From contig NW_002060950.1 of assembly GCF_000150275.1 (NCBI RefSeq), positions 68,679 through 132,678 on the forward strand: DNA of 64,000 nt, read 5' to 3'. The position numbers and the translations under genes were made by a program. Below, piece by piece: positions 33,312 through 56,941 of the stretch (its first letter is position 1; the number at the start of each line of letters is the position of its first letter). The notes under the pieces are model-generated. The model was not told the DNA's origin and did not search any database. It saw only the letters and a program-made list of their open reading frames with translations. The DNA comes from Trichoplax adhaerens. Its lineage: Eukaryota; Animalia; Placozoa.

Positions 33312-36300
33312 ATGGCCTTGCCTCAATTAATTCTGTGTATTGCGCTGCTATCATGCTCTCACGGTAAGATATTTAATACGATTTTGATATTTCTGTAATA
33401 ATAATTGTAGATCATTAAAGCTAAAATTGTTTCTAGATATAGAATATTTTACAAAAGAGAAACTTTAACATCACTGTAAAAATTTCCAAGTACTAAAAAT
33501 CTATGAACCGGTCATATGAATCATTAATTTCAACTCAACAATTACTTTTGTCTAGGTGCAACCATTATTAACAATATTACACCGACAACAGGCAGCACGG
33601 CAGGAGGCACCCGAGTCACAATTTATGGGGAAGGTAAAATTCGTATATTTGATATACTTCAATCTTTAATATTTCTATTCTAATAGAGACTATGTCCAAT
33701 TATACTGAAATCTATGCATAAACAATATTAAAAGTAATAAAGCTAGAACTATTGCAGTTGCAAACTGATATCCATGCAAACTTATACCTTTCATTTGATT
33801 AACTAGAATTCAGTCAAGATCAATTCAATTATGATGTCCCTTCTCGTGGCAATATCGTATACCTCTCTTCAGATCGAAACTTACTAAGATGTGATGTTAT
33901 CACCTACTTAAGTAACACAAAAAAAATCGTCTGCGATACACGGTAATACATATTAATGTAGACCGCATAATAAAACTACTACTCTTTTTCATTTTTCGAA
34001 AATTATTCGTTCATGATACTTGTAGCTAAGACTACTACGAGCGAACTTCGAATAGTACTTCTCTTCCTATATGTGACTGCTCGATATATACTACTAACTA
34101 CTTCATAGATAACTTTACTATTATTAAATGTAAAGTAGTTGAAGTCTCTAAAATTCTAACTAAAATATTACAGCAGTAACATTGATACTGCTTCGGTGCA
34201 CTGGAAAATATTATATATATACATAGCACTGTCATTTATCCTTTTATAAAATATACTGCATTCTATCGAATTTATTATTGTATGGACCATACAGAATATC
34301 TTGCATCAACTTCGACTTTAATATGCAATAGTGCGCAATTTACGTGGTCATGAATATGCCAGATTTTTGGATAAAAGAAACTTCAGTTATGCTAGCCTCA
34401 GTATTTAATACTGTACGTATTTATATATATATATACCATTATTATTAGTAACCTCTACGTGACAAATAGAGACCCCTAAATTAGTTACGTACGTAATAAA
34501 CAGAAATCTACACCAATAACGTTTACTATGTCTGCCGTAATAGTTTATTCACGTAACCATCTGTGAACCACTATTATAAGTATTATTATTAAAATTATTT
34601 ATTATCCTGGAAAATATAAATGCTGAGATAATTATTCCAATATTAAATGACATTAAGTAATTAATTATCTCATAAGGTATTGCATTACGATCACAAATTA
34701 TCTGTTTAACTATTACTATTACATATTTACATTAGACCTTCACCTTCCTCTGAAGTATATAAATTGATCCTTTTCGTTGACGGTGTAAGAATTTCCGAAA
34801 ATAGTGGAGCATACTGTGGCAGTCAATGTAATTACCAGGTATGTAAACTATATGAAATCGTAAAGTTAATACTGTACGTAATCAAAGCTTTATCCTCTAT
34901 TCAGTTGCATCTTCTAATAGAACTAACTTTTGATGTTAATTCATTCAAGTAAATACTTCGTAGTTATCAACGGCATATTTAACCTACTGTCAACAAATTA
35001 AAATAGTATACAATGCAATGTTCTCATATTTAATTACTGATAAAATAGCAAATGTCAAGGTTAATATACTAATAGTTTGCTTTTCAAAATCATGATAGCA
35101 ATATTTTACATTGGAGCCATAATAATATATTCGATTATACTAACGGGCATACGGAAGTTGCCGTAATTACTGAGAAATACTGTAGAGTATAACATACGAA
35201 AATAACGAAATAATAAACTTAGCCTTAGTTCGTACTATGTTATTTGATAAGGCTGTATTATTACAGATAACCTTTATTATAGTATTATACTGTGCAATAA
35301 TCTCCATAATACTGTACACTAAAACGATTGAGACTCCGCAACCTGTGATATCACCTATAGCCACACGGAAACATCAATAAAATACTTGTAAAGACATAGT
35401 AAATTAATCTTAAAGATTTTGTTATTGCTTTTTAGAATATAAATCATTAAAAATATAAAATGGCTCATAGTTAAGATTTTATCTCAGATATAGTGAAATA
35501 TAATTAATTAATGTGATTCTTCATTTAATGCATCTATTTATCTCATTCTCTACCTTTAGTATTCAGAAAGTGTTTCACCGACTATAACTGCCATATTACC
35601 GAAAAGTGGTTTACCGGGTAAGTGGCGTAGTCAATTTTTGAGAGCAGAATGTATTACAAAATGGATAATTGCCTACTCCTACAAATCACAAGCTAGTTTA
35701 TGTATGTGATGCTCACTGTCAGAATTATTTTACTATTCGCTTCAAAATATACTTTACTTCTTCTATACATAGGAACCATAATAACAGTAAAAGGTCGAAT
35801 TTTTACCAATTCTGTTAACAGTATTCAAGAACTTGAAAACGATGCCACCGATGTCAAGGAGATTGTAAGGTACATTGCACCGTAACGTTATTATGAGAAT
35901 AAAGCAAATGAACCTAGCAGACAGTATTCTAAGAAGAAATTTTTCATTTACTGAATACTCACTCAAAATTCAAAACCATAGTGATAATCTAACTCAAAAT
36001 AGTGTTATTAATTTAAAATTATGGCTTATCTAACGAACCAAAGCTAAATATGTGCGTATTATGCAATCTACAACTCGCACTAATTTAATTATTAATTCTT
36101 TCCGTGTATCTTTTACCACTGATAGATTATATTTTGGCAGCACCAGCATTTGCAATCCAATTGATCCGTCCACAAATGATGTGTATGGAGTATTAAATTT
36201 ATTTTTCATGATACAGAAACCAATCATAATGATAATTTGTTCGATGTTGAATACCGCAATTGTTCCCACCCCAATACAAATAATTTTGCCTGAAATTTAA

Positions 36301-39300
36301 GTGATTTTATAATGAAATTATCTACTATCATAGATACGGCACTGCAATGAATTCTGAAACATCTACCGAAGGCTACATCAAATGCAAGCTATCAACCACA
36401 ATAATCGGTAAATATAAGTTTTAGCTATAAGGAATAATTTCATCAGGGTTTGAGATTGACGGACTAATTAAAAAAATCCTTAGATTCAATCAATGGATCA
36501 TTTATCATTTCTACTCTGGGAAGGTAAAATAATATTATTTTAAATACTATAGCAAATACATAACAGCTGTTACTACCAGTTATATGTGTAAGGCATCTAT
36601 TACATAGCGATTAATGCGAAAAAAGTAATGAGACTTTGTATGCTAATAGATCTATACGAACTAACAAGGCACTAGTCGCGGACTCCCACCTAAATTTACA
36701 CCTGTTTCAAACTCATGCTGGTAATAATTAATTGCCGTTTATTACTGTATTAAGCAATTAACTAGAAATGATCTTTGCGAATGAAGCAATCACTATCTAT
36801 ACAATAACTTTGTAATGTAGCGAGGTCACGATTGTTAGGGGTATCATCTTGATTGTAATTAATTATACACGTATAGCTATAAAAATTTACTAACAAGGTG
36901 TAGTGCAGCCCAAATATAGCTTAAGATTATATACAGTATGTGTGAATATCGTGCATGACGTAATTACTAGGCTAATTAAGATAGATACGCTTGTATAGGT
37001 GCTAGATCGTAGAGTGAGATTAAATATGTGAGGATTTGTATCAGTAATTGCAATACGGATTGTAAAAGTTATTAGTCATACTGTTTGGCACCTCCAGGTA
37101 CGCTAGAGGTGTGATGTTAGCCTTATTAAGGTAGATAATGATTTATGTGTCACGAAGATACTCTGTACACAATTGTATATAAGCAGGAGATTTTATCTCC
37201 GAAGACAGAGTAGCCATAGATAATCTAGTCCTTGGTAGAAGACGTAATTATTGTAATAAAGTGATTTTCCTTCAAGTTTTGGAAGTCGTTGCGTTTCGAT
37301 AGACACATTATTACACAAGGGTACGATATTTATAAACCGCTTTCTTCTAATACTCTTGTAGCAATCTCAAATATCATTCCAAATGTGGGTAGCACAGAAG
37401 GCGGAACAACTGTTAAGATAATGGGTCAGCATTTGGGTAGCTATCCAAACAACACCCGTGTCGTAATAGGAAATGTAGATTGCCAAGTTGTCAATATTAG
37501 CAGTAATTTAATAACCTGCATTACAGGAAAATCATCAGCGCCTTCGGAAATGTATTCAGGTAATAGTCGTATTAATTTCTAATCACGCAAGGTACAGTAA
37601 GAGGCAAAGAAGCATGAGCATTCCGCTAAAGCTTTTAGCGATCTTAAATAATCACTAAAATTATTCATTTAAAGTGTATAAAATTTGATAGCTCTAGCTA
37701 GGCTGCGAAGATATACTGGATATTAACCTATAGACTAAACATATGTAGGAAATAGAGGTATGCTTCGTGAGATATGGCTATCCAGCTTTCCTAGTACACT
37801 ATCAGCGATTAGCAACTTAAATTCGACATCAGCTGATTATCGGTCGGAAATTGTCCCTACCGCTGCTATGCCAACATCAGCTTCTTTTAATGAATCTATC
37901 CGATACAGCCAGCGACTTTCCGGCTACTTTGTTGCTCCAAAGAATGATGATTACTCCTTTTTGATAAAATCTGACGACGACAGCGAACTATATTTCAGTA
38001 CCTCTGAAAGTGCAAAGAATAAGGTACAGCAATTGACTGCATCAGACGGTACTATTAGATGAATTACATTACCTCCTCTAAAATATTTAGTTCATGCCGT
38101 CTCTGGCCTAATGTACGAGTTTTACGTATAAGAAATACTAATAATTCACCCTATTAGCAGAGATTAATTGAGAGGTTGCACCGTATAACGGTATAATTTC
38201 GCTCAAAAACAACAGATAAATACTATTGTTCTTTTCAATTAAAGTTTTTAGCCCTCGAGCATAAAATGAATTCGATTATAAGACTTGCTCTTCGTTTATC
38301 TTCAAACTATAGGTAAAAATTGCATCTTGTCCGTCATGGTCTAGCACCTGGGATAAGTATTCAACGCAGAGGTCAAAGAAATTGAGCCTTAAAGCTGGAA
38401 AAATGTATTACATAGAGGCTCTTCATAGGCAACGTTATTCCCATGCGGACCTTCAAATTGGAGTGCATATCCATAACACTAGATACCTAGAAGCACAAAC
38501 TGGCCAAGCTATAAACGAACTGCAACAAATTGTTGAAACTACTATCGTCCAGAAAGAAATACAGGTAAGAATGTATTTCAAAGCCGTATCTTCTTTCAAT
38601 TTTATATTATTTGAAAGTAATTTCCATTAGCGATATTGAACTATTAAATCGGTGTTTGTAAGTGAAATACTATTTCATTACTGCTAGAAATGTAAATAGT
38701 ACTAAGCCTTTTAACGTTGCCGTTTACTCACTGAACCAATCTTGATCCTATTTATTTTATGTAGATTCTAACTATCAATAATTGGGATAACGGAACACTC
38801 TCTGAAAAGCAAGAACTCTACGTTCCTTTCTGCTTGACTGGAAACTACTTTCAAATCATTTACAATAATGAATCAAAGGAAAACGAATCAATACCTTACT
38901 GCGAATACTTAAATAGTTATAGGCTAATATTTAACGGCATGGAAACTAAAAAAATACATCCTAACACTACGGCTAAAGGCTTGGCCAAAGCATTAAATAA
39001 TCTAAGCACCGTCAAAGCTATAGGATACCTAACCGTGATAAAATATCACAATTCCACCGGTAATAAGTACATTATCGAATTTCCAATCAATTTAGGGCCC
39101 CAAAACATGATAAAAGTTAGTACACCAAATTACAATGAGACCATTACGATTACGGAAATACGTAAAGGTAGAGCACCTTTACTTGAATTTTCGCTTGATT
39201 GGGGCGGTCAAATCTCAGATCCGGTTCAATTTGATATAACTGCCAAAAATCTACAGGCTAACTTACAGTGGTGGTTTGGAACATGGTGCCTTTATTTAAA

Positions 39301-42300: not shown

Positions 42301-45300
42301 ACCTGATGCTATACGATGTGCTTGCAGGTTTTACCCACAATTTTTTTAAAGGTACTAGAACTATTTCTTTAAGTTAAATCACTACTATTTCATCTATGAT
42401 ATTTTGTAGGAGGAAATTTAGTTACTATCAACGGAAATAATTTTGGAAATTCCAATAATTTGCAGTTTCCGGTACTAATTGGTGTATCCCCATGTAAAAT
42501 ACAAACATACAGCAATACTCAAATCACATGCATTACCACTTCACACCAAAGAGGTACTTTTAAACTTCAGGTAGCCATCGAAGGGCGTGGCATGGCCATC
42601 ATAAATGGAAACGCTAACTACGAGTACATCTTCAAAATCCTGAATATAATTCCAAGATTTGGCTCTATTACTGGAGGAACAGAAGTTACAATCAGTGGAG
42701 AAGGATTCGGAACAAACGCATCCAATTTCATCATAACTCTCGGCTCATCAGATTGTAACCCGATATCAAGTAATGCTACAGCTATCAAATGTATTACAGA
42801 AAGTTCGTTGAAGGAAGTGCAAATTGATAACTCAGGCCATAGTAAAGAATTTGGTCTTGGCTACGCATGGAACAAACCAAATGTTACAATTACTGTCGGT
42901 ACATTTATCAAGTGGAGTTGGTCTGCAGTTGATTATTCATCTTTACGCTACGGTGTTGTTCAAACCAGTTCTAAAGACTCAACATTTTATGATGGAAGTG
43001 GATTCATCAGCCAGCGTTCCGCTACCGGTTCGTTCAGGCATCAGTTTACTGTCCCTGGAGTTTACTACTATTCCGCAGGTAATGTCGATGGGCGTGATCT
43101 AGTTAAAATGAATGGTATCATCAATGTCATAGTAGAAAAAACTGCAAGTGCAACTTTTTCGCTAAAAACTAAGCAAGGTTATGAGGCGAATTACGTTAAC
43201 GAGGAGGTGAACATGACATCAGACAACTCAGGTTGCTCATTCGGAGATGGTCGCACTAGCTCAATCATTGGGTGTGTAGATCCTAAACCGTCAAATATCG
43301 AGCCAACCATGTTTAAATTTACTTGGTGGAGATGCAGCACCCCCATTATCTCTACAATAGAGCCAAATATCGGTACAAGTGCCACCAATATTGTAATTCG
43401 TGGTAAAGGATTTAGTACCACTGCCTGTCAAAATATTGTATCAGTAGGGAATTACTCCTGTTCAATATTATCATCTTCTACAACTGAAATCGTTTGCAAG
43501 CCTACTTTGCAAGGATCTATGACTCCTGGAATCCGTCAGGAGATAAAGTTGTTAGTTAAAAACTTAGGCTACTCATTAACGACAATTGCAAGTGTAAGTA
43601 AAAGATCTTTCACCTTAATGCCAACGATCTCCTCGGTGACTCCAAGAACAGGATCCATTGCTGGTGGCACAGTAGTGACAATTACCGGTGATGGCTTGTC
43701 AGCAAATAACATAGAACCTGTAGTTCAAATTAATGGTTCACTTGATTGTAAGGTCAAGACTAAATCATATACACAAATTACTTGCGTAACTCCCAAGGTC
43801 TTATCCAGTACAAATAACTTAGATGTGAAAGTTCATATCAATGCTGTCGACAGCGTTTGTCATGGAAATGCATGTAGTTTTGCTTTCACGTCAGCTAGGA
43901 CTCCCACGATAACCAGCATTAACCCGACAACTTTTGTCAGTGGGACTACAGTTACTCTTTCAGGTTCTGGATTCTCAGCAAACTCATCTTATATCACTGT
44001 CAAAGTCGGCAATTTTAGATGTCCAGTCATAACTGCATCTAAATCATCAATATCTTGTAACACACTAAACGTAACTTCAGGTACACACAATATTAGTGTC
44101 TACGTAGCCGATAAAGGCAACGGTAGATTCCAATCCGATAATAAAGTGACAAATCAAGCTGTAATTACAGCGATTTCTCCATTGCATGGCAGCTTATTAG
44201 GCAACACCTTACTGACAATATCAGGCAGCGGTTTTAGTAGCAAGAAAGATACTTCAGTCAAAATAGGCGGAACATCCTGCACAATTCAAAGTGTAACAAC
44301 TTCACAAATTAAGTGCAGAACTACGGCAAAGACCGAAGGCAGCTATGACGTATCCGTAACATCGCATGGGATAGCATATCCCAAACAAACATATAGCTAC
44401 AGAGCAAGCTCAACACCATCTGTAACAGGAATTAACCCAACAGCCGGCGAGAGAGGAACCACAGTAACTTTAACGGTAACTGGAATAACTTCGGGAATCT
44501 CTGATATAAATGTTAAAATAGGAAGAGCGAGTTGTATTTTGCAGTCATTCACTGGTAACACAATTGTTTGCACAACAACAGCAAACACTGCCGGTAATTA
44601 TGATGTACAAGTCATATCTGATGGTGATGGTAAAGCTTCAGGAACGGCTCAATTTAGGTATAGACTAAAGGTCGTAAGTGTATCCCCATCCAGATCTTTG
44701 CTAGGCGGAGGCCGCTACATCACCATTCAAGGTAACAGTTTTGATGTACTAGGAGGTACCACTGTCAAAGTGTGTGGCATTATATGTATACAAGATCAAA
44801 ATACGAACCTGACCGAATCAATTGTAACTTGCGAGGCGCCATCCATGAATGTTAATCAAATGAATGATTTGAATTGTTCTATCGATGTTAGTACCAGTTC
44901 CGGACAACAAGCAACACTTGCTGATTCTTTCAGATACTTAGCGTCTGGAACCCCTGTTGTAACCGCCATATTTCCTAATCGAGGTGGTACCGCTGGCGGC
45001 ACAGCAGTCACGATAAGTGGAACAGGTTTCAACACACAGCCAGGTAAAATTTCAGTGTCCATAGCTGGTACAGCATGTTCGATTAATTCTCTTACATCAA
45101 CATCGATTAATTGTACGACCGGCCCACACCAACGAACCGAAAAAGCGCTTGTGAGGGTTTATACTACCCTCGGTAACCGTGCAGGCCTACCAATCTACAA
45201 CACCACTGATAAAGAATTTTACTACGCTGACTTCTGGTCCTCTAAATATACTTGGGGGGGCAGGGATCCTCCAACGGAAGGAGATTATGTTGTGATCAAC

Positions 45301-48300
45301 AAAACCCAAACGGTTATTCTAGATGTTGATACACCAATTCTAAAATTTCTACTGCTGAAAGGAGGAAAGCTCATATTTGACGAAAAAGATCTTACCTTGA
45401 AATCCGAATACATTCTTATAACTGATAAAGGCGCACTCCAAGTAGGTACTGAAGACAAGCCGTTTCAACATAATGCCAACATTATTTTATATGGCCACGT
45501 GCGTTCCAAAGAATTACCTATTTATGGTGCTAAAGTGCTTGCCGTTAGGGAAGGAACATTAGATCTCCATGGTAGGCCAATTCCTGTTACTTGGACAAGG
45601 CTAGCATCAACCGCCCATCAGGGAACTACAACTCTCAACTTAGAATTAGCAGTAACATGGCAGTCGGGAGATAAATTAGTATTAGCTTCCACTAGTACCA
45701 GTCCTGAAGAGAATGAGGAGGTAACCATTGCGAGTGTTACCAATGGCGGGAAAACGGTGCTACTACAGTCGCCTTTACGATATACACATATCTCAGTATC
45801 TCAAAATATTGCAGGTCAGACCATTGAAACCCGCGCAGAAGTTGGTTTATTAACACGAAATGTTGTAGTTCGAGGGTCGAAACATTCAGAATGGATTGAA
45901 TTTGTCAAGGAATGCCCTGTCGACTTTGATCCCGGCCAGTTTGCGACTCAAACCTGCTTCTTAGGTCGTTACGGGAATGAAACACTGAGCGATCAATTCG
46001 GTTGTCATATTATGATGGCGTCAAAAGAAATGGATAAAGATCTGATCGTTGGGAGGCTATCGTACATCGAAGTAACTCATGCTGGTCAGGCCTTTCGCCT
46101 TGGAAGATACCCAATTCATTATCATTTAATGGGAGATATACAGACATCTTATGTACGTGGCTGTGCCATACATAATACGTTCAACAGAGCAGTCACGATT
46201 CATGGAGTTCATAAATTGACGGTAGAAAACAATGTAGCTTATAACACCATGGGACATAGCTTTTTTTTGGAAGACGGTATCGAAACAGAAAATATCATAC
46301 AGTACAACCTTGGTATCTTTACGAGACAATCTTCAAGCTTGCTTAATGTAGACATCACGCCAGCAACATTTTGGATAACTAACCCCAATAATACTGTACG
46401 CCATAACGCTGCTGCAGGTGGCACTCATTTCGGTTACTGGTTTAAAATACCAACTCACCCTGAAGGGCCTTCATTTACTACAAAAATTTGCCCAAGGAAT
46501 GTCAATATCGGCCAATTCTATAACAATTCAGCTCATTCTTTCGGTCGCTTTGGTTTATGGATCTGGCCGAATTATCATCCAAAAGTAGGTGGCAGTTGCA
46601 ATTCCAATGTGGATGCCCCGGTAAAATTAGAAAAATTTCTATCCTACAGAAACCGTAAAGGTGCTGAGGGAGTAAGCAGCGGTTCAACACAGTACGTAGA
46701 CTTTACAGTAATGGATAACATACAAGCAGGTCTAGAAATTCACCAGGTATCAGGTAAATGGGGAGAACAAGGTCCTCTAGTGCATAATTTGATTACGGTT
46801 GGCCATAGCCAAGTCCAAGGTCCTACTTTTATCTGCCAGCAAGCGGGCTTAAAAACCCCCAAATCTTCTAGGCTAACAGTTAAAAATGCTACGTTTGTCA
46901 ATTATGATCGCACTGGCTGTTGGGCTTTAATCCCTTGCGCTTTTTGTAAAGCCAATCAAGGTGGATTTCCAACAAAATTTGAAGAAATAGCGTATTTAAA
47001 CTCACCTAACAGGGTGCGGTTCAACTATGCTCATGAATGTATTTATGAAGACACTGATGGAACGTTAACTGGTATAATCGGAGGTAGTTATGTCCCTTGG
47101 AATGACAATTTGCCGCTATCAAACTGCGTCAAGGGTGAAGTAGAAATAAGCGATGAAGCTCCTGGCGCTAAATGTGATGAAACGGTTGTAATCAGACGTT
47201 TATCATGGAATCAGCCAAGTCCGTCAGCTTTACTATTTAAAGATACAGTTCTTACCAATCGTTTCGGCAGTAGTGTGGTACCTTATAAAAAGAAAAGGCT
47301 TACCCATCCTAAGGGTTGGATGGCCACCCTTGTTATGGGAGAGGACTACAACATGTACTGGAGAAATGCTGCTCATTTGGTAAATATAAGCTACACAGCT
47401 GGATTCTACGAATTAATGAGCGAAGATTATGTTTACATGAATCACCAATTGACTCAGATACCGGACCATTTCGCGACGACTACTAAGTTTATGAATATGT
47501 CCGACGGTTTACCAGATCCGCTGACTGCAGAAAATGGAGAATGGTTTTTTAACCGTACAACTAAGTCCTTTTATTACATTACCAAAGGTAGTGAACTAGA
47601 ACAACCGCTATATAAACGCAATATGCAACCGAAAGTTTACCAATGCTACTTCAGGGATTGTGTCAAACCTGTACCTAAACCAGCTCCTAGACAGCGTCCT
47701 TCAGACTATCGGTTATGGTCCGAGAAAGGTAGTTGGAATGGTAAAGTTAATAAGGCTATACCGAAGTTTGGGGAAGAGATCGTAATTGAGAAGGACTGGT
47801 GGATGGTACTCGACGTAGTTGATCTACCCTACTTCAAAAAAATTACTATTTATGGAGCTTTAGAATTTGACGATAATTCTGATAAAGTCTTAAATACCTC
47901 CTACATTTTCATTCACGGTGGCCAATTAATTATTGGGTGGGAACATAGTCCGTACACCCATAAAGCACACCTTATACTTAGTGGAAATCATCAAACACCT
48001 GAAATAGTTTTAACCAACGGACCTGTTTTAGGAGCCAAGGCCATCGGTGTTTTTGGCTATCTTGATTTACATGGTAAACCTAAATCAACAACATGGACGC
48101 ATCTAGCTCAAACAGCTCCTGTTGGTGCTAATGAGATCACGTTAGAAGAAGCAGTCGATTGGGAACTAGATGATGAAATAATTATTACTTCTTCTACGTA
48201 CGAACCTTTCCAAACCGAAAAAGCACAAATTTCCCATATTTCTACTGATAAGCGCACTATTACCCTATATCAGACTTTACGCTATTCTCATTTATCTGCT

Positions 48301-51300
48301 GTTAACATGGTCAGTGGGCGCCAGTATGCAATGAAAGCGGAGGTGGGATTACTAACACGTAATATTGTGGTTGAAGGAGCAGAAGATGCTATCGGATCGC
48401 TATCAAAGCAAAGCTTTGGTGGCCGTATTTTAGTAGGATCATTTCAGCAGAATGATGGTACAAGATTTACAGGTAATGCCAGAATTGACTACGTGCAATT
48501 TAAAAACACTGGGCAGGAAGGATATCGAGATTATTTCGATCCGCGATTTTCCATTGCGTTTCTGGATATTGGTTTCGTTCCGGCTATGAATCAATTTTAT
48601 TCTTACGTTCGAGGGTGCAGCTTTCATGACGGATATAATACCGCAATCGGAGTTTTCGGCACTGAAAATATGACCGTATCAGACAACGTAATTTACAAAA
48701 CTGTAGGCTCTTCGATTCGAGTTTGGGGTCGAAAAAATCGAATTATTCATAACTTAGCTTCTTTGACGCTAGCCGTCGCTACCTACAATGGTAGATATGA
48801 AGAAGAAAATACCGAATGGGAAGCAAGTTTTGAAGTACATAAAGCCGTTGAACTAACACTGCGTGATAATGTTGCCGCGGGTTCCCAACGCGCCGGATTT
48901 CGTATCCGTGGCGAAAAATGTTATAATATCAATCCGTCGATCAGTTGGTCAAATAATATTGCACACTCGAACATCCATGGTATCATGATGGGTTTTCAAG
49001 ACGCAGAACCAGGCTGTACAAGAATTGCAAACTTTGTTTCTTATCGTAATTACGATTACGGAATATTCTTTTATCAATCATCCCGTATGATAATGTATAA
49101 TGTTACGTTGATCGACAATGTCTGCGGTATTATGCCGTTTGTTTATGCTCCGGCATCAGTGACACATTTAACAGCAAATAAATTTGTTCGCATCCAAGAA
49201 TCCATGATTATAGGTACAAGTCCAAATTTTGATTGTAGTGCTGACTTCGTGATCCCTAAAGATACTGCCATCACTAAAAAGCATCGATGTCCTAAACCTG
49301 CCTCTGGTGGTAGAGCCGGGATATTTATGACCAGCTTCGTCTCCGGTACAAATGCAGCCCCCTTTAAACCGTGGCATGGAGTCAAAAATTATCCTGCTAT
49401 CAACGGCATAACAGAAATTTCTTCTGTTATATTTGCTAATTTTGGTATTGCTTGCGGAAAGCGTGATGTAGCTATTAGTTCAAATAAAAAAACACCTGAT
49501 GCTATTCATCCGATTCAAATGTCTGGTATTACGCTGGACAACGTCTATGAATCATCGAAGTTATACTTCTTCCCCCCAAGTATCAGCTGGGTCAATCCAT
49601 CTGATTGTGTCGATATGGATTGTGATGGTCAAAAACACGCATTGATAAGAGATTTAGACGGAACCTTTCTAGGTAAGACTGGCAATACAGCTATTGGCAA
49701 AGCGGAATATGAATGGGATGGAGATCCCAGGCGTGGTTTAGGTGATTACCGAATACCCAAGACATTTTTAACTGCACTAAACGGATCTCGAATCGCCGTA
49801 AATTCTGTAGCGCCTTATAAAGGTATTGTACGCGGAAATCGTACGTCTTCTAACTGCAACTGGGTAAGTGAATGGAATGCTTATAGGTGTTCAGGACTCG
49901 ATCACCAAATGTTTATCATAGAGAGCATGGATAAGGATACCGAAACGCGTCGTATTTCCCCAGTAGCTCTCGCTGCAGATGGTTACCTGGACTTATTAAA
50001 TGGTCCTCAAGACTTTGGCTGGTGTCTTGGCTATACTTGCCAAGAACGTTTATCTACCTTCTTTACTACTGTGTCAACTGGAAAACTCTACGATGTTCAC
50101 TTCACAGGAACTAACCCCCAGCACTTACGATTGCATTTAATCAATTCTAATTATAATCAAGCCATTGTTGTTGGGATCTTTTATTCCAATCCTCAACGTC
50201 TTGATGTCTATCAATTAGGCACTTATGTTAACCCCACTAACGCTAAACTTAGTGGTAGTACCTTCGAGTATCTTCCGAAAGATCCGAAAAATCCTACTAA
50301 GTTTATTCCTAACTTTCATGGAATAAATGGATTGAACTATTACGATAGTGCTAAACAAACCCTCTATATTTTGGTTCGAGGAAGCAACCCAATCGATATT
50401 ATCACAATGCCGATAATACAGCTCTCCTTGAAATTGCCCGCGATTACGATAGACGAGTTTTTTGAAAAGAATTTAGTTAATAATATTGCTGAATTACTAG
50501 GTATCGATAAGTCAAAAGTAAGGTATGTTGAGGCCATTAATGAGCAATCGAATACCAGACGAAAACGAGCTTCTAGTACTATGACAGTTATTGTAGAAAT
50601 TGGCAATCCACCAGCACCAACAGTTAACGTTGTTGCAGAAGAATTTTACGAAGTAAACTCTACTGACGGTATTAACTCGACTTTACTTTTCCCTCCTCCT
50701 ACTTCTGCTACAACTAATCCAACTCCAAGTTCATATCCTCAAAATTATACCGGAACTTCAGAGCAGATGACCCTTGTTACACTGCAAGTACTAGCCAATA
50801 AAGTTGTGGAGGTCGCCCAAATTGGCGCTTTTCACAAAAAAGGTTACAATCTTCTAGAAATTACTGTTACTGATCCAAGCTCTAGTCCTCAAGATCCACG
50901 AGAGGGGAATCCGTATACAAATACATCTGACTCACCAAATGGAACGGTCTTATATCAAGAGTTACAGGAATCACTGAAACTAAATTCAAGCTCTTACAAT
51001 AGTTCATCGTATACATACCTAATTGCCGGTCGACTACATTTGCAAATGCAACCATCCGGAAGCAACGAAACCGTTTCGCTTCCTACTCAGCCTAGTTTAG
51101 CAATGCTAGATATAAATGGTAATCTAATAAAGCAACTTGGACATCGTTATAGCTCTAATCCATGGACAGTAACGGCATATTTAAAATCTGGATACGGTCA
51201 CAACGATGCTTTCATTGGTGGTAATAATACAGTTTCTTTTTCTTCTGGAATTGCAAATTTTACTGATTTAAGTATTTCTCATAATGGTACGTATGTACTA

Positions 51301-54300
51301 TGTTTTAACGTTTCTCAGCCAATAGAAGCAAACTTTAGTATTTGTTCTCAAGAAATAGAGATATTAGAACGTATTTTTTACCTAAAAATGATACGAGAAA
51401 TTGCTGGAGCAAATGAAACTGTACCATTTCACATGCAACCAGTTGTGGAAATACTCGATGCAGCAAATCATGAAAGAATTACTAATCTAGGCTGGAAAAA
51501 GCGTAATTGGTTTATGCACGCCAAAATTGTAAATCAATCAATTGATGGAAAAATTGGCGGTCAAAATGTATTAAATCTTCTCCATTTACAAGAAATTGGT
51601 CTCGCTACATACGAAAGTTTAAACATCAATTACGCTGCTAAAGATTATGTTTTAAGTTTTTCTTTAATAACAGAACCGAAGTCATCCTATACAAATTTAT
51701 CAACTAATAGTGCTCCTTTTGAAGTTAAAGAACGTATGTTTTACCTAAGTGTTATTCGACAGCCCAGAAATTGCAATGAAACTGTTGCATGTGGGCAACA
51801 ACCTGCACTCGCTATTCACGATAAAGCCAACGGACAAATTGTGAACAATATAGGCTGGCGAGGTAGAAAGTGGTTCATTCAAGCGTACTTAGATGGGAAC
51901 TGCTCAACAACGCTAAATGGTCAAACGAGACTTCCGATACCAGCTAGCGGCATAGCACAGTTTACAAATTTAAGTATATATGATTCTGGTGAACAATTCT
52001 CATTGTTTTATAATGTTAGTTTAGATCAATATTCTGCGACTTATTCTGGTTTATCGGTAAAGAGTAAGAAATTTAACGTCGGCATGAGAGAATTCTACCT
52101 CCATGTTACCATGCAACCTTCTAATGCCAACGAATCTGTAGTTTTCGGACAGCAGCCGATAATAGAAGTTCGTGATGTCGGTACTCAGAAGATTGCAACG
52201 CCATTGAAAGAACCTTGGTATATATACGTTTCTTTAGTCAAGAACCCATGGCCATTGGAGAGTAACGTTTCTCTATTGGGTACTAAAAATGTGACTGTAT
52301 TTAACGAACGGGCAAGATTTCAGAATCTACTGATAACGAAATATGGTATCGGATATAAGTTAAAATTTATATCCACACCTGCGAGCAAAGTTATTAGATC
52401 AAAGTTGTTTGAAGTATTTTATGTCAATAGCTATTCTCCGGTTTTTAATGAAACTAATAGCTTGTATAAATCTACAATATCAGAGAATGTTGAAATTAGA
52501 AGTTACGTTGTTACAGTATTTGCAACAGATAATGATACTGGACCCCAAGGTAAAGTGTACTATGAAATAACAAATGGAAATTCCGATGGTGCATTTGATA
52601 TTGACAAGACGAACGGTCGTATCGTTACTAATGGATCACTTGATCGAGAAAAAGTTTCAGTTTTTACGTTAACAATAACAGCATATGACGGAGCAGTGAT
52701 CGAGAAAAGACGATCTACAAACGCAACAGTCATTATTACATTGCTTGATGTCAACGATAATACTCCTTACTTTGCAGAATATCCAGCGCACTATATTGTT
52801 CCAGAAAATACACGGATTGGCGAAACTGCTGCTATAATTGATGTTCGCGATCCTGACGCTGGCGAAAATGGGGCACTAAATTTTACGATGCTTTCATGTG
52901 ATTTATGCGGCTACTTCATACTAAATTCCACTACTGGAGCTTTCATTACTAATAAGAGCTTGGAACTAGAAAATTCGACTACATTACTACCGTATACAAA
53001 TTTTACGTTTAATATTCACGTTGCAGACCGTGGTACTCCACAGCCCAGAGCAATTACTGGAATAGTTATCTTAACAGTTATACCGACTAATGAATATGCA
53101 CCAGTATTTACTCGAACTAACTTATCCCTAACATTAGCAGAGAACACGAAGGTTGGACATTTAGTAGTGAAAGTTTTAGCTACAGATCGAGATATCGATC
53201 GCCACGGTATCGTGGATTACTACATTGAATCAGGAAACTTTCGTAAGACATTCTCTATTGCTAAAACAAACGGTGAAATTATTTTAATGCAACCACTAGA
53301 TTATGAAACATATTCGTCGTATAAACTCGTAATTACAGCACAAAATGGTCAAGATTACAAGAAGGCTACAAAGATGACCGTTCACATAACGGTTACTGAT
53401 ATACCAGACACAAATGGAGATGTCATCTTAATAGAAGATGTTTTGCCAAAAATTGCACCTTATCAAAGCGTAGCATCATTTGCTGGAATACCTAGTTTTA
53501 GCCCAATCAAAGTTATTTTAAAGTCAAAGCAAGGCAAACGGACCGATATCACCAATGATGTATCTCAAACTATTTTTGATAGTGAAGCAACACATAATTC
53601 TCTAATCGTTAGCCGTCGTAATGGCACGACAGTAATTACCGCTGAACGAGCTACTGTTAACCGCCTGAAGGTTCGTGTTATTAATGTCGGTATCATTGAC
53701 GTTCCATTAATCGCTGTAGATTATACAAGTCTACAATTACAAGCATTTTTATTCCCAAATATTAATAAGGAGGAAGTTAGAAAGGTTTATCTTATCGGCC
53801 GTAGTAAACAATTCGTCAAAGTCGTTTTTTATGCAAAGATAAAAATTAGTGACGGCGAAGTTATTGACGTAACTGATAGTAACCATACCAAATTTTCAAT
53901 ATCGTACAAAAGTTCTGCCAAAGCCGCGTTAGATTCTACCATCAAATCGAACAATGTTCTAACCGTTAATAAAAGCAGCCCAATCGGTAAAATTATTATA
54001 CATGGGTCTTTCGCTAATCAATCGAGACAGGAACTAGTTTTGCACGTTAGTCATGAAGCTGTCAACATTTCTTCTATGCTATCGGTCAACTTAAACCTTC
54101 GAAATAACACTCTGTATGGCACGGCAAATTCAACGATTGCCAGACCAGAAGTCGTGATGAAAATGGCTAACGGAGATAAATTGATGATTAGCAACTTTGT
54201 AACATACCCAAACCTAGTGACATTCACTGTGTCAAAATCGAAATACGCTCGCGTAAACCGCACAACAGGCATAATAACATTACTAGCCAACTATTATGAC

Positions 54301-56941
54301 CCTGTGATTTTTACGGCTTCATCACTTGATAAACCATTCATCAAGACCTTTATTTCATTTTATTGCAATGTAATACCAGGTTTAGGAGGCGTCCATCTTG
54401 GCGAACTTGTCGGGCCGGCAATTGGAAGTTATCTAAAAGGACAAAATGTCAATGTTAACGTCTATGTTAATCGCGGCTCAGCTAAACTGGCAGCTGTTAA
54501 TGTCCTTATTAAATTCGATCCCAATAATATAAAAGCAATCAGTTTTACTCCTAGTCATGACAATGATATTATTTTCGCTTTATACAATACCACTATAAAG
54601 GTTGGAGGTCTAATCAATGCTGCTGACAATACTTATGGGATAATGTACAGGATTGGATTTATTTCAGCGATAATAATGAAGCCAGGTTATCCAAACATTA
54701 CTGGGCGTCCTTTGGAGATTATCGACAATTCTCTTCAATATTTAAACAGTAACATTGAGGTAAAGAAATGTGTTAAGCCCGCAATGGGAGACAGTAACGG
54801 AGATTGCAGTTTTAATATTATGGATGCAGCATATATAAAGATCGAATCCTCGAAAGCCTTGCAGCCTCTAAATGTATCACTGGACTATGACCATAATCAA
54901 GTTGTCGATTATGCTGATGCCTTATTTTTAGTTAAAGTATTTTATAATTTAGCGAGATTTATCAAAAGCGTGTCTGTTAATATCCCACACAATAAAACTG
55001 ACTGCAAGTTGAAGATCGTCTTGCAATTAATGAAAGGCTACGGAGAAGTTACCAGTGACAAGCCTGATCTGTATGTTGCATTCACTTATGGTAATAATTC
55101 TATCGCACACTTTATGTCCACTTCTCGATTTGAAGTCGGTCAAATGATGCGTGAAGGCACCGTTACAGGCAATACTATTAATGGGGTAATTGTGAAAGCC
55201 GAAAGTGATAACGCTAGAAATTACCACATATCTGCTACAACAAGCCATGCAATAGGTAAAGTTGGAATATCGATATTCCAAGTACTGAGAGATTCAAGAA
55301 ACTCGGTGGGAAATATTGCAATCTCGTCAAGCGTTGGAACGAAACAACCCTATTTATACACTGAAACTGTTAAAATACAGCTCGCTAGTAATCTTAGTGT
55401 CGTTTATAAAAATGGATTTTCTCCAATGCAAATCTATAATATAAACACTTCGACCTATCTATGTTACTATCCTATTACCACGAAACAGGTGATATGGAAA
55501 TTTGAGAACGATTATGATCGAGTTGTAAAGCATAGAGAAGCGCAATTTTACACCTTTATACGCAGTATCATAAGTTCTAGATACCAAAGTATAAGCTGCA
55601 CGGGCTTTAAAATTAGCAAAGGTAGCATTTTAGTCCAGTTTAATGCTACCGCACCGTTTGATCAATTGAATCGGTCGTTGGTAATAATGTACACAGAAAT
55701 CCAAGCTGGAATTTCTATATCATATCATGGACATGTGCTAAAAACAGTAAAGGAAATGTTGGTTAATGGTCAACAATACTTTGGCACAGGAGAACGTCCT
55801 GGATTAAAAGGTGGTGAAGCTGCCGGCATGATTATTGGAATCAGTTTAGGAATTATAATCACGATAATTTTGGTTTATGGTGGCTATAAATATAAAACTC
55901 AATTGTCTAACAATGCAAGAGTTTCTTCAGTAGAGCTGCCTAATGACACAAAAATAGCCAAGTCCAAGGTTTCATATGAAGGTTCCTTCGATAATTACAA
56001 CTGTAGCAAGAGTGATATAAAATCTAAATGCCAAAGCGAACAACATTCTACTGAAATTACTGTGGAATCAACCATAAATAAAGTGCTTTTACCAGATATT
56101 GGAGATTCTCTGGCTTCACCGTCAAAGAATGAGGAATTTACTCCTTCAATACGTTTAGAAAATGGCTTACAAAAGTCACCATCTGTCAGTTCAAATATGG
56201 GAAATAAATTGTTGGTTGATAACTCTCGTAGTCGTGGAATGTCCATAATTTCGTTACCTCCAAACTATGTAAATGAAACTGATGCTATGGGTAAGTGCGA
56301 TAGACTAGATATTATGTATTTGCAATCATATTTTACATTCTAGATAAGTAAGGAAAAGATTGTGAGTTACCAGCAATATACCCAATAATTGTTTACCAAA
56401 CTATTCTGCAGATGGAGCAATAAAAATGTCAGTCAAGATTAAAAAATGCAGTGGATCATTTGGAAACATTGGCGTTATAAGTGTTTTACCGACGGAATAT
56501 ACCTTAGCAAATATTCGTGCGGTTATCCTTAAAGTCCTTGGTGAACAATTGATTGGTAAAGAATTCATCTTCATTTCTGAAAAGCTTGATGAAATTCACC
56601 CAGCAAATGAACGGAAAGCTATTGCAAGGGATATTTTCCATGAGGATACAATTCTCATCAAACAACTTAAACTGCTGTGTAAGTATATCATTTTAGCATT
56701 TCAGTAAATAACGTATATATAAATGAAAATAATTATGTTACCAATGTACGTAAATGCGTTATCTTCTGTCCCGATTTTGAAATATCAAACAGCTGACAAT
56801 CGTTCAGAGACTTGTACTTGCGGAAACCAAGCGAAATTCGAATGTTGCAGACAGCAATCATACTGTAGTATCAGATGTCAGAAGTTGGATTGGCCGTTCC
56901 ACCGAGCCAACTGTAGAAAGCCTGCTTTGGATAAGATTTAA
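33312..56941 (+). CDS. Giant (~6,000 aa) fibrocystin-L/PKHD1L1-like single-pass receptor with added cadherin, cohesin/dockerin-like, SEA-like and intracellular MYND modules
   Basis: Signal peptide MALPQLILCIALLSCSHG (exon 33312-33363). About 19 small 5' exons carry IPT/TIG repeats (P..GS..GGT.VTI.G.GF) and PA14 (LSGYFVAP..YSFLIKSDD). Exon 42410-56290 carries more TIGs, two G8 domains (WSSKYTWGG; WSEKGSW), beta-helix repeats (GQAFRLGRYPIHYH), CVDMDCDG, cadherin repeats (LDRE, DVNDN) and a TM helix (~55819-55887). Exons 56412-56678 and 56793-56941 join in phase. Confidence 0.9.

What the first reader, a model, noticed from the sequence alone, without database searches (positions are those of the whole stretch)
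33312..56941. Chimeric giant receptor: fibrocystin-L ectodomain fused to a cadherin-cohesin-dockerin stalk and a MYND-finger tail
Seen: one continuous frame runs from the PKHD1L1-type TIG/PA14/G8/beta-helix region through RRKR (50557-50568), a Ser/Thr/Pro linker, four repeats, three cadherin repeats (~52430-53410), a cohesin-like and dockerin-like pair, a SEA-like module and a TM helix. Two in-phase exons then add a cytoplasmic domain and a MYND finger. Known: vertebrate fibrocystin/fibrocystin-L have no cadherin, cohesin, dockerin or MYND modules. Inference: this may be an undescribed adhesion/sensing receptor that combines a sheddable fibrocystin head, a self-assembling stalk and its own intracellular effector.
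Basis: partly seen in the sequence, partly recalled or inferred. Interest (0 to 1): 0.92.

Follow-up and report, generated by a model that had tools for sequence, protein, structure and literature searches.

The report
Placozoan fibrocystin-L with cohesin-dockerin stalk
This is the Trichoplax version of fibrocystin-L, a giant cell-surface protein. It still carries cadherin, cohesin-dockerin, SEA and MYND parts that vertebrates lack but other invertebrates share in part, so it is an old gene form and not a one-off chimera.

Summary
One gene (33312-56941, + strand) includes a 13.9-kb exon with no stop codon. That exon runs from the TIG/G8/beta-helix head through RRKR, an S/T/P-rich linker, four Ig-like repeats, three cadherins, three beta-sandwich repeats, a cohesin fold, a dockerin, a further beta-sandwich, a SEA-like domain with an invariant G-S motif, and the only TM helix. 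Two in-phase GT-AG introns then add a conserved tail module and a MYND finger.

- **Already public:** the gene is in GenBank as "Fibrocystin-L" of Trichoplax sp. H2 (RDD41961.1, 5948 aa), though that model misses the MYND exon.
- **Family-wide parts:** RRKR aligns with a basic cleavage-type motif in 18 of 20 relatives compared, vertebrates included. The first two Ig repeats, the SEA-like domain, the tail module and the MYND finger recur in hemichordate and echinoderm fibrocystin-L.
- **Stalk parts elsewhere:** Nematostella fibrocystin-L has the cohesin-dockerin pair. An unnamed eukaryote assembly has G8 + four Ig + at least 11 cadherin matches + cohesin-dockerin.

So this is a full-length early-animal form of fibrocystin-L, and vertebrate PKHD1L1 is a shorter form. 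I found no paper describing this architecture.

Cohesin-dockerin binding has only weak model support.

The parts
33312..33363 (+). Exon 1: start codon and signal peptide (17 codons plus 1 base), donor GT at 33364
   Evidence: Exact match to the N-terminus of the H2 model P0171
33555..42253 (+). About 16 small exons encoding the N-terminal TIG/IPT repeats and the PA14 domain. Boundaries are approximate and come from tblastn pieces.
   Evidence: tblastn of P0171 on the window, 86-100% identity per piece; Pfam PA14 and 5 TIG on P0171:1-1300
42410..56290 (+). Giant coding exon of about 13.9 kb, running from mid-ectodomain to most of the cytoplasmic tail.
   Evidence: ORF 42460-56343 without a stop; collinear with P0171 aa 1247-5858; donor GTAAGT at 56291
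45250..45606 (+). First G8 domain, followed by a CEMIP-type beta-helix at 45994-46554
   Evidence: Pfam G8 and CEMIP_beta-hel; genome search with PF10162
47734..48108 (+). Second G8 domain, followed by the second beta-helix
50557..50568 (+). RRKR, a proprotein-convertase-type site at ORF aa 2700-2703. It is followed by a V-E-I-G-x-P-P motif that recurs in most relatives.
   Evidence: Aligned with an R-x-K/R-R-type motif in 18 of 20 fibrocystin-L relatives, vertebrates included; the two ENA cadherin-lineage rows read RRQ. Cleavage is inferred from PKHD1 KRKR3613 (PMC10579373).
50569..51015 (+). Linker: 36% S/T/P, 7 N-glycosylation sequons
   Evidence: partly conserved in ambulacrarian relatives
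51016..52431 (+). Four tandem Ig-like repeats of about 118 aa each
   Evidence: Self-alignment A2, 31-37% identity to the first repeat. Atlas feature search points to Big_1/SMCHD1-Ig-like, a lead only. The match covers the first two repeats in invertebrate relatives and about one in vertebrates.
52465..53409 (+). Three cadherin repeats
   Evidence: Pfam Cadherin, E 1e-50, 3 stretches
53464..54339 (+). About 290-aa region read as three beta-sandwich repeats, Big_2-like at best. The fold was not predicted here.
   Evidence: Homologous to the same region of about 70 cadherin-linked proteins. Only weak Big_2/intimin signals.
54343..54735 (+). Cohesin-fold domain
   Evidence: AlphaFold2 pLDDT 87.8. 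Foldseek gives 52 PDB hits at E<=1e-3 and nearly all of those listed are cohesins. 13 of 25 aligned sequences hit Pfam Cohesin; the window sequence itself does not.
54769..54969 (+). Dockerin-like domain with two acidic Ca-loop-plus-helix segments and a family-conserved Cys pair
   Evidence: Family profile hits PDB dockerins first, E 7e-5. 9 of 25 aligned sequences hit Pfam Dockerin_1. Both D-x-N/D-x-D...D loops are visible in A1.
54970..55452 (+). Beta-sandwich domain ('X') between the dockerin and the SEA-like domain
   Evidence: AlphaFold2 model m2f024aea159f residues 1-166; FN3/CBM-like matches at Z about 7, which is non-specific
55468..55797 (+). SEA-like juxtamembrane domain, with an invariant G4388-S4389 at 55621-55626 in a G-S-I-L-V motif
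   Evidence: Best VIA-align matches are MUC16 SEA domains, Z 8.6 and 8.2. G-S is invariant in 25 of 25 aligned sequences.
55819..55887 (+). Single transmembrane helix
   Evidence: The only 21-residue window with mean Kyte-Doolittle above 2.0 in the 4627-aa exon
55888..56290 (+). Proximal cytoplasmic tail with no recognised domain
   Evidence: No Pfam family
56412..56678 (+). Penultimate exon: a conserved tail module of about 88 aa. The fold is untested and 'ubiquitin-like' is not shown.
   Evidence: Aligns with the segment directly before the MYND finger in 10 ambulacrarian fibrocystin-L proteins. No PDB profile hit and no Atlas hit.
56793..56941 (+). Last exon: MYND zinc finger and TAA stop
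   Evidence: Pfam zf-MYND 29.1 bits against a cut-off of 22.7. 14 invariant columns shared with 11 relatives. The 114-nt intron before it is in phase, with a GTAAGT donor and a CAG acceptor.

Best explanation
The locus is the single fibrocystin-L (PKHD1L1-type) gene of Trichoplax. It encodes a type I membrane glycoprotein of roughly 5,990 residues.

**Domain order (shown).** Signal peptide; about 14 TIG/IPT repeats with a PA14 domain; two G8 + beta-helix units; a proprotein-convertase-type site RRKR; a glycosylated linker; 4 Ig-like repeats; 3 cadherins; 3 beta-sandwich repeats; cohesin; dockerin; a beta-sandwich; a SEA-like domain with a G-S motif; the TM helix; a tail of about 135 aa; a conserved tail module; a MYND finger.

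**Evolution (shown in part).** This is not a recent chimera. Parts of the stalk and tail are shared with fibrocystin-L of cnidarians, hemichordates, echinoderms and an unnamed eukaryote lineage. Vertebrate PKHD1L1 keeps only one Ig repeat, the TM helix and 8 cytoplasmic residues.

**Mechanism (inferred).**
- The head is cut from the stalk at RRKR in the secretory pathway, as in PKHD1.
- The SEA-like domain self-cleaves at G-S and holds the stalk on the membrane stub non-covalently. Force or proteases can then shed the ectodomain.
- The Ca-dependent cadherins and the cohesin-dockerin pair make strong self-contacts. These contacts are either within one molecule or between copies, because the genome shows no other partner of this type.
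- The MYND finger recruits cytoplasmic partners.

The likely role is a sheddable surface-coat, adhesion or force-sensing receptor.
For: **One gene.**
- A 4627-codon exon without a stop.
- Collinear at 99% with an independent H2 assembly model.
- A single TM-like stretch.

**Family identity.**
- 42-49% identity over 951 aa to named fibrocystin-L proteins.
- It is the only G8-bearing gene found in this genome.

**Modules shared with relatives.**
- RRKR aligns with a basic cleavage-type motif in 18 of 20 relatives. PKHD1 is cleaved at KRKR3613 (PMC10579373).
- The two Ig repeats, SEA-like domain, tail module and MYND finger occur in the same order in Ptychodera, Saccoglossus, Asterias, Apostichopus, Lytechinus, Antedon and others.
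- The tail module and MYND finger are directly adjacent in those proteins. That fits the predicted 56678|56793 splice.
- Nematostella has cohesin-dockerin at E 5e-18, a SEA-like domain and a weak MYND match.
- Locus L005 has G8 + 4 Ig + at least 11 cadherin matches + cohesin-dockerin at 35.4 bits, E 5e-13.

**Fold and motif evidence.**
- Cohesin fold: pLDDT 87.8, pTM 0.82; 52 Foldseek hits at E<=1e-3, nearly all of those listed being cohesins.
- Dockerin: profile hits to PDB dockerins at E 7e-5; Pfam hits in 9 of 25 aligned sequences.
- SEA: Z 8.6 to MUC16 SEA; G-S invariant in 25 of 25.

**Binding.**
- Cohesin against dockerin as two chains gave weak support, score 0.55 with a best control of 0.01. 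The mark was reached by 51 of 78 solved complexes and 2 of 108 mismatched pairs. At 0.60 or under it was reached by only 5 of those 78 and by all 4 mismatches that passed. The runs agree in at least 98% of contacts, and the partner's pLDDT is at least 56.
- No other cohesin-dockerin of this type was found in the genome apart from an allelic contig.
Against: - One mRNA from 33312 to 56941 and the MYND splice rest on homology and splice signals only.
- **Public model differs.** The H2 model ends by read-through at 56707 without the MYND exon.
- **Pfam misses the window's own cohesin and dockerin.** It finds neither in the window sequence.
- **Atypical MYND.** The Trichoplax finger has C-C where all 11 relatives have C-x-x-C, so zinc binding by that pair is uncertain.
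- **Weak binding test.** It is a weak pass and may reflect memory of solved cohesin-dockerin complexes.
- **SEA match is borderline.** Z about 8 is near the tool's background.
- **Cleavage untested.** Cutting at RRKR and at G-S was not tested.
- **Direction of change unresolved.** The ENA lineage is unnamed, the tree is a quick one rooted at the midpoint, and basal support is weak at 34. Loss in bilaterians and gain in non-bilaterians both remain possible.
Confidence: 0.7

Rival explanations
1. One reading: a lineage-specific chimera. A placozoan fibrocystin-L gene recently fused with a neighbouring coherin-type cadherin gene and a MYND gene, creating a new kind of receptor.
For: Vertebrate PKHD1L1 lacks all these modules. 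The stalk module (beta-sandwiches, cohesin, dockerin, X, SEA, TM) also forms the C-terminus of cadherin proteins that match none of the fibrocystin-L head domains.
Against: The Ig repeats, SEA-like domain, tail module and MYND finger are present in ambulacrarian fibrocystin-L. Cohesin-dockerin is present in Nematostella fibrocystin-L. The whole G8 + Ig + cadherin + cohesin-dockerin order is present in L005. RRKR and the motif after it recur across the family.
Confidence: 0.07
2. Ancient insertion and not ancestral retention. The original fibrocystin-L was Ig-SEA-TM-tail-MYND, as in ambulacrarians. A cadherin/cohesin/dockerin cassette from a coherin-like gene was shuffled in between the Ig repeats and the SEA-like domain in some non-bilaterian lineages.
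For: A large clade of unnamed ENA sequences and all bilaterians have the Ig repeats directly next to the SEA-like domain. The same cassette exists in cadherin proteins without G8. The giant-exon structure makes in-frame insertion easy.
Against: The cassette sits at the same place in Trichoplax, Nematostella and the L005 lineage, which are far apart in the tree. The SEA-like domain of non-G8 stalk proteins aligns with that of fibrocystin-L, including the G-S motif. That fits one old unit as well as it fits an insertion.
Confidence: 0.3
3. The cohesin-like and dockerin-like modules are only structural spacers. One is a beta-sandwich and the other an EF-hand-like Ca module, and they do not bind each other. 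The stalk does not self-assemble.
For: Pfam does not detect either in the window sequence. The binding prediction is only a weak pass. TMEM132 has a cohesin homologue and no dockerin homologue is detectable in vertebrate proteins (PMC6030884).
Against: Cohesin and dockerin occur together, in that order, in every A1 row that spans both, except P0093, whose dockerin part is poorly conserved. Both Ca loops keep their acidic ligands in the window sequence. The AlphaFold2 two-domain model has pTM 0.82. The three controls scored 0.00-0.01 against 0.55.
Confidence: 0.3
4. The MYND exon is not part of this mRNA. The transcript ends by read-through at 56707, as in the H2 annotation, and the MYND ORF is a separate small gene or a relic.
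For: The public H2 model ends that way. The ORF has its own ATG at 56723. The second Cys pair is shortened to C-C. No reads were obtained.
Against: The intron is in phase, with a GTAAGT donor and a pyrimidine-rich CAG acceptor. In 10 relatives the MYND finger follows the homologous tail module with no gap. 14 columns, including 7 Cys and 1 His, are invariant.
Confidence: 0.1

Closest known systems
Vertebrate fibrocystin-L (PKHD1L1) and fibrocystin (PKHD1)
   Same: Signal peptide, about 14 TIG/IPT repeats, PA14, two G8 + beta-helix (TMEM2/CEMIP-like) units, and 42-46% identity over 951 aa. The basic cleavage site sits at the same alignment position. One membrane-proximal Ig repeat is shared. 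Both are type I proteins with a single TM helix.
   Different: Vertebrate PKHD1L1 goes from one Ig repeat straight to the TM helix and an 8-residue tail (PMC10593026). It has no cadherin, cohesin, dockerin, SEA-like domain, tail module or MYND finger.
Hemichordate and echinoderm fibrocystin-L-like proteins (for example Ptychodera flava P0194, Asterias amurensis P0196)
   Same: The whole head, the basic cleavage site, the linker, two Ig repeats, a SEA-like domain with the G-S motif, the TM helix, the tail module and a C-x-C-G type MYND finger, all in the same order.
   Different: They have no cadherins, no beta-sandwich triplet and no cohesin-dockerin; the Ig repeats abut the SEA-like domain. 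Their MYND second Cys pair is C-x-x-C, against C-C in Trichoplax.
Nematostella vectensis fibrocystin-L-like isoform X2 (P0282)
   Same: Head, Ig repeats, one beta-sandwich, cohesin-dockerin (E 5e-18), a SEA-like domain, and a weak MYND match at the C-terminus.
   Different: No cadherin repeats were detected, and it has two Ig repeats instead of four.
[quoted passage not shown] 2012, as cited in PMC6030884). Also the unnamed giant cadherins P0023-P0030.
   Same: Cadherin repeats and a cohesin domain in one membrane protein. The stalk from the beta-sandwiches to the SEA-like domain is homologous to the C-termini of such proteins, with E down to 3e-68.
   Different: The fibrocystin-L head (TIG, PA14, G8, beta-helix) and the MYND tail. 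The domain order also differs from the cohesin-then-three-BIG order reported for TMEM132 and coherins. Orthology to the published coherins could not be tested because the paper is not held.
Bacterial cellulosome cohesin-dockerin pairs
   Same: Cohesin jelly-roll fold. A dockerin with two Ca-loop-plus-helix segments.
   Different: Both modules lie next to each other in one animal membrane protein. The dockerin has an extra conserved Cys pair. Identity to bacterial cohesins is only 12-21%. Binding is not shown.

Membership tests
Fibrocystin-L / PKHD1L1 family | TIG/IPT array with PA14 and two G8 + beta-helix units in one secreted or type I protein | tested here: met
   Pfam: 14 TIG, PA14, 2 G8, 2 CEMIP_beta-hel. 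Signal peptide at 33312. Single TM helix.
Fibrocystin-L / PKHD1L1 family | Closest named relatives are fibrocystin-L proteins, and it is the only such gene in the genome | tested here: met
   The top 120 hits are fibrocystin-L or PKHD1L1 proteins at 39-49% identity over 951 aa. G8 was found only in this gene in G000.
Fibrocystin-L / PKHD1L1 family | Conserved basic (proprotein-convertase-type) site after the last head domain | tested here: met
   RRKR aligns with an R-x-K/R-R-type motif in 18 of 20 relatives. Cleavage itself cannot be tested here.
Cohesin (PF00963) | Nine-stranded jelly-roll fold of cohesin type | tested here: met
   Model pLDDT 87.8. Foldseek gives 52 PDB hits at E<=1e-3, and nearly all of those listed are cohesins.
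Cohesin (PF00963) | Sequence match over Pfam's gathering score | tested here: not met
   No Pfam hit for the window sequence itself. 13 of 25 aligned sequences match, best E 6e-10.
Dockerin type I (PF00404) | Two duplicated Ca-binding loop-helix segments | tested here: met
   Both acidic loops are seen in A1. Two helices appear in the model. The family profile hits PDB dockerins first, at E 7e-5. Pfam gives no hit for the window sequence but hits 9 of 25 aligned sequences.
Dockerin type I (PF00404) | Binds a cognate cohesin | tested here: inconclusive
   Complex prediction gave weak support: 0.55 against a best control of 0.01, with the caveats stated.
SEA domain | Alpha/beta sandwich fold next to the membrane | tested here: met
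   The best VIA-align matches are MUC16 SEA domains (Z 8.6, 8.2, 7.7). Gpr126 and TMPRSS6, which contain SEA domains, also match at Z 7.0-7.2. Z is near the tool's background level.
SEA domain | G-S-V-V-V type autoproteolysis motif | tested here: met
   G4388-S4389 followed by I-L-V. G-S is invariant in 25 of 25 aligned sequences. Self-cleavage cannot be tested here.
zf-MYND (PF01753) | Score over the gathering cut-off and a full set of Cys/His zinc ligands | tested here: inconclusive
   29.1 bits against 22.7. All 7 Cys and 1 His are present, but the second pair is C-C instead of C-x-x-C.
Coherin (cadherin + cohesin proteins) | Cadherin repeats and a cohesin domain in one transmembrane protein | tested here: met
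   Orthology to published coherins was not tested because the paper is not held.
Classical cadherin | Catenin-binding cytoplasmic domain | tested here: not met
   No Pfam family in the tail at 55501-56340.
TMEM132 | TMEM132-type conserved region, cohesin and three BIG domains in that order | tested here: not met
   No TMEM132 Pfam family hits the window stalk or the A1 and A6 members. The order here is beta-sandwiches before the cohesin.

The most novel reading that the evidence does not exclude
The adjacent cohesin and dockerin form a true Ca-dependent, force-resistant clasp, either within one molecule or between copies. That would make this the first working cohesin-dockerin system in animals. 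Together with the SEA self-cleavage site and the MYND tail, it would be the original force-sensing and shedding machinery of the fibrocystin family, which bilaterians and then vertebrates dismantled step by step.
Probability: 0.3. Interest if true: 0.8.

Novelty: new variant of a known kind. Interest (0 to 1): 0.6.

Why it matters
Fibrocystin (polycystic kidney disease) and fibrocystin-L (hearing loss, stereocilia coat) are medically important, and how they work is still unclear. Vertebrate PKHD1L1 has almost no cytoplasmic part.

Early-branching animals and invertebrate deuterostomes carry a fibrocystin-L with several extra parts:
- a SEA-type self-cleavage site
- a conserved tail module with a MYND finger
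- in placozoans, a cnidarian and one unnamed lineage, a cadherin and/or cohesin-dockerin stalk

These give concrete, testable ideas about what the family originally did: act as a cleavable adhesion, coat or force-sensing receptor with its own signalling tail.

The locus also places a paired cohesin and dockerin in an animal protein. [quoted passage not shown]

I found no paper linking fibrocystin with dockerin, and only incidental co-mentions of PKHD1L1 and MYND.

Tried and rejected

**Spliced model.** It was searched exon by exon, by reference only. The joined protein was never built or searched.

**Protein searches that gave little.**
- The search of ORF aa 2700-4400 was swamped by FAT-type and other cadherins.
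- The word-indexed search of aa 3670-4420 found nothing. The exhaustive search then found 220 relatives.

**Fold of the tail module.** The profile search against PDB found nothing and the Atlas search gave no usable hit. The 'ubiquitin-like' label is therefore unsupported.

**Fold of the four Ig-like repeats and the beta-sandwich triplet.**
- The PDB profile search with the four repeats gave only chance-level hits.
- The triplet gave weak intimin/Big_2 signals.

**X + SEA model.** Foldseek gave no hit at E<=1e-3. VIA-align was needed.

**Literature not reachable.** Nichols 2012 and Peer 2009 are not held. From memory, Peer et al. listed eukaryotic dockerin-like modules; I could not check this.

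**Other limits.**
- The organism behind the ENA assemblies (L001, L005) could not be named.
- The H2 genomic locus could not be fetched because the protein is too long for the tool.
- The careful tree search did not finish, and only the quick tree is reported.

**Rejected readings.**
- Mis-assembly, because of the independent collinear H2 model.
- Bacterial contamination or transfer of the cohesin-dockerin pair, because it lies in the same exon and has eukaryotic relatives.

Full report

Yes. The window is Trichoplax DNA. Its genome copy G000 has 105.6 Mb in 1414 contigs, and the closest public protein is RDD41961.1, 'Fibrocystin-L [Trichoplax sp. H2]' (P0171, 5948 aa).

ORF 42460-56343 on the + strand is 4627 codons long with no stop, in DNA of 35% GC. 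P0171 maps collinearly from 33312 (ATG and signal peptide) through about 16 small exons. It then runs as one piece at 99% identity over 42406-56313.

Pfam finds the following:
- 9 TIG, 2 G8, 2 CEMIP-type beta-helices and 3 cadherins in the giant exon
- PA14 plus 5 more TIG domains upstream
- a MYND finger in the last ORF, at 29.1 bits against a cut-off of 22.7

RRKR lies exactly at 50557-50568. The giant exon has only one strongly hydrophobic stretch, at aa 4451-4476. There is thus no membrane anchor between the fibrocystin head and the stalk.

**2. The modules Pfam does not see in the window sequence**

*Stalk relatives.* An exhaustive search with the stalk (aa 3669-4419) found 220 relatives. 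Many are C-terminal parts of cadherin-rich proteins.

*Cohesin and dockerin.* I aligned the putative cohesin-dockerin stretch with 24 relatives (A1).
- 13 of the 25 aligned sequences hit Pfam Cohesin (best E 6e-10) and 9 hit Dockerin_1 (best E 8e-7).
- The family profile hits solved dockerins first (E 7e-5 to 1e-3) and then cohesins.
- AlphaFold2 gives pLDDT 87.8 and pTM 0.82.
- Foldseek returns 52 PDB matches at E<=1e-3, and nearly all of those listed are cohesins.
- Both dockerin Ca loops keep their acidic residues. A Cys pair is conserved in at least 90% of the family.

*SEA-like domain.* The region after the dockerin folds with pLDDT 85.7.
- Residues 1-166 form a beta-sandwich.
- Residues 172-281 match MUC16 SEA domains best (Z 8.6, 8.2, 7.7). 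Gpr126, TMPRSS6 and dystroglycan follow at Z 7.0-7.2. These Z values are near the tool's background.
- The match is backed by an invariant G-S in a G-S-I-L-V motif in all 25 aligned sequences. This is the SEA self-cleavage motif as I know it from MUC1.

*Repeats.*
- The four repeats at 51016-52431 are 31-37% identical to the first repeat. They look Ig-like (Big_1/SMCHD1-Ig-like) by language-model features only.
- The three repeats at 53464-54339 give only weak Big_2/intimin signals.
- Neither region was folded.

**3. The tail**

The giant exon ends at a GTAAGT donor (56291). After a 121-nt intron the frame continues at 56412. A second GTAAGT donor at 56679 (phase 1) and a CAG acceptor at 56790-56792 join the frame to the MYND ORF.

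I searched each exon separately by reference and did not build the joined protein.

Both exons have clear relatives at the C-termini of fibrocystin-L-like proteins of hemichordates and echinoderms. In those proteins the two segments are directly adjacent and in the same order. This is good indirect evidence for the splice. It also suggests that the H2 model, which reads through to a stop at 56707, is cut short.

The family's MYND finger starts with C-x-C-G. Trichoplax alone has C-C instead of C-x-x-C for the second pair.

The 'ubiquitin-like' label for the penultimate exon is untested.

**4. What it is**

The head is 42-49% identical over 951 aa to named fibrocystin-L proteins. This is the only gene with G8 domains found in the genome.

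The following table shows which 'extra' parts other lineages share.

| Lineage | Parts shared with Trichoplax after the head | Calls |
|---|---|---|
| 18 of 20 relatives compared, vertebrates included | Basic cleavage-type motif aligned with RRKR; the two ENA cadherin-lineage rows read RRQ there | 50 |
| Hemichordates and echinoderms | Linker, two Ig repeats, SEA-like domain, TM; most also the tail module and/or the MYND finger | 41-43 |
| Amphioxus | Ig repeats and SEA-like domain | 41 |
| Vertebrates | One Ig repeat, TM, 8-residue tail | 41; PMC10593026, |
| Nematostella fibrocystin-L-like X2 | Two Ig repeats, one beta-sandwich, cohesin-dockerin (E 5e-18), SEA-like domain, weak MYND | 41, 46 |
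| Unnamed ENA eukaryote (L005) | See below | 45, 54, 75 |

In L005, a 4730-aa ORF carries TIG, G8, beta-helix, four Ig repeats and cadherins. A 165-nt intron splits a cadherin repeat. A second ORF of more than 3278 aa follows, with at least 11 cadherin matches and, near its end, cohesin-dockerin (A1 profile 35.4 bits, E 5e-13).

PKHD1 is known to be cut at the corresponding KRKR3613, with the head staying attached or being shed (PMC10579373).

So the architecture is a shared, old form of fibrocystin-L and not a Trichoplax chimera.

Whether bilaterians lost the cadherin/cohesin/dockerin cassette or some early lineages gained it is open. The quick tree puts the L005 lineage outside Trichoplax + Cnidaria + Bilateria, but with weak support and a midpoint root.

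**5. How it most likely works**

*Shown:*
- domain order and topology
- conservation of the two cleavage-type motifs
- the cohesin fold
- the dockerin loops
- the Pfam MYND match

*Inferred:*
- cleavage at RRKR in the secretory pathway
- SEA self-cleavage that leaves a non-covalent, force-sensitive joint near the membrane
- Ca-dependent contacts through the cadherins
- a cohesin-dockerin clasp
- partner recruitment by the MYND finger

The genome shows no other cohesin or dockerin of this type apart from an allelic contig. Any binding must therefore be within one molecule or between copies.

The two-chain prediction gave weak support only. The score was 0.55 with a best control of 0.01. The mark was reached by 51 of 78 solved complexes and 2 of 108 mismatched pairs. 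At 0.60 or under it was reached by only 5 of those 78 and by all 4 mismatches that passed. The runs agree in at least 98% of contacts, and the partner's pLDDT is at least 56. Memory of solved cohesin-dockerin complexes may contribute to this score.

**6. Comparison with what is known, and novelty**

Cadherins with cohesin domains ('coherins') are described from choanoflagellates and sponges. [quoted passage not shown]

In the library I found:
- no paper that holds both fibrocystin and dockerin
- only incidental co-mentions of PKHD1L1 and MYND
- only one incidental paper with placozoa and fibrocystin

The protein and several relatives are already public, and some carry an automatic MYND annotation.

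I rate this a new variant of a known kind. The gene itself is known. The reading of its stalk and tail, and what that implies for the family's original form, appears not to have been described.

**7. Limits**

- No reads or transcript data were obtained.
- The organisms behind the ENA assemblies are unnamed.
- Two key papers were not available.
- Three regions were not folded.

Noticed in passing
L004 = G000:C1077:1-2676 (matches window 54403-55578): A small separate contig of the same genome carries a 99% identical copy of stalk residues 314-705. It is probably an unmerged allele. The partial public protein TRIADDRAFT_62730 (271 aa) is 99% identical to the same stretch.
   Followed up: partly
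window 56679-56707: The public Trichoplax sp. H2 model RDD41961.1 ends by reading through the GTAAGT donor at 56679 to a stop at 56707. It therefore lacks the MYND exon that relatives place right after this segment.
   Followed up: yes
Alignment A1, columns about 180-245 (for example P0028, P0014, P0026, P0033, P0043, P0047): In the giant multi-cadherin relatives, the linker between cohesin and dockerin is longer and carries R-R-R or R-x-K/R-R motifs. If it is cut there, the two halves might stay joined only by the cohesin-dockerin contact. Trichoplax has no such site.
   Followed up: no
L005:10001-34193 (ENA ERZ25071281 contig): An unnamed eukaryote has a fibrocystin-L-type gene of more than 8,000 codons in two giant exons. 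It has at least 11 cadherin matches before its cohesin-dockerin. The locus ends before the gene does.
   Followed up: partly
L001:1-6015 (ENA ERZ25071792 contig): The roughly 1000-aa stalk relatives called as single proteins (such as P0029) are preceded by ORFs full of cadherin repeats. They are probably last exons of larger cadherin genes.
   Followed up: partly
L002:296-649 (ENA metagenome contig, P0051): A 117-aa fragment is 63% identical to the boundary between the X and SEA-like domains. It may come from another placozoan-like organism in an environmental sample.
   Followed up: no
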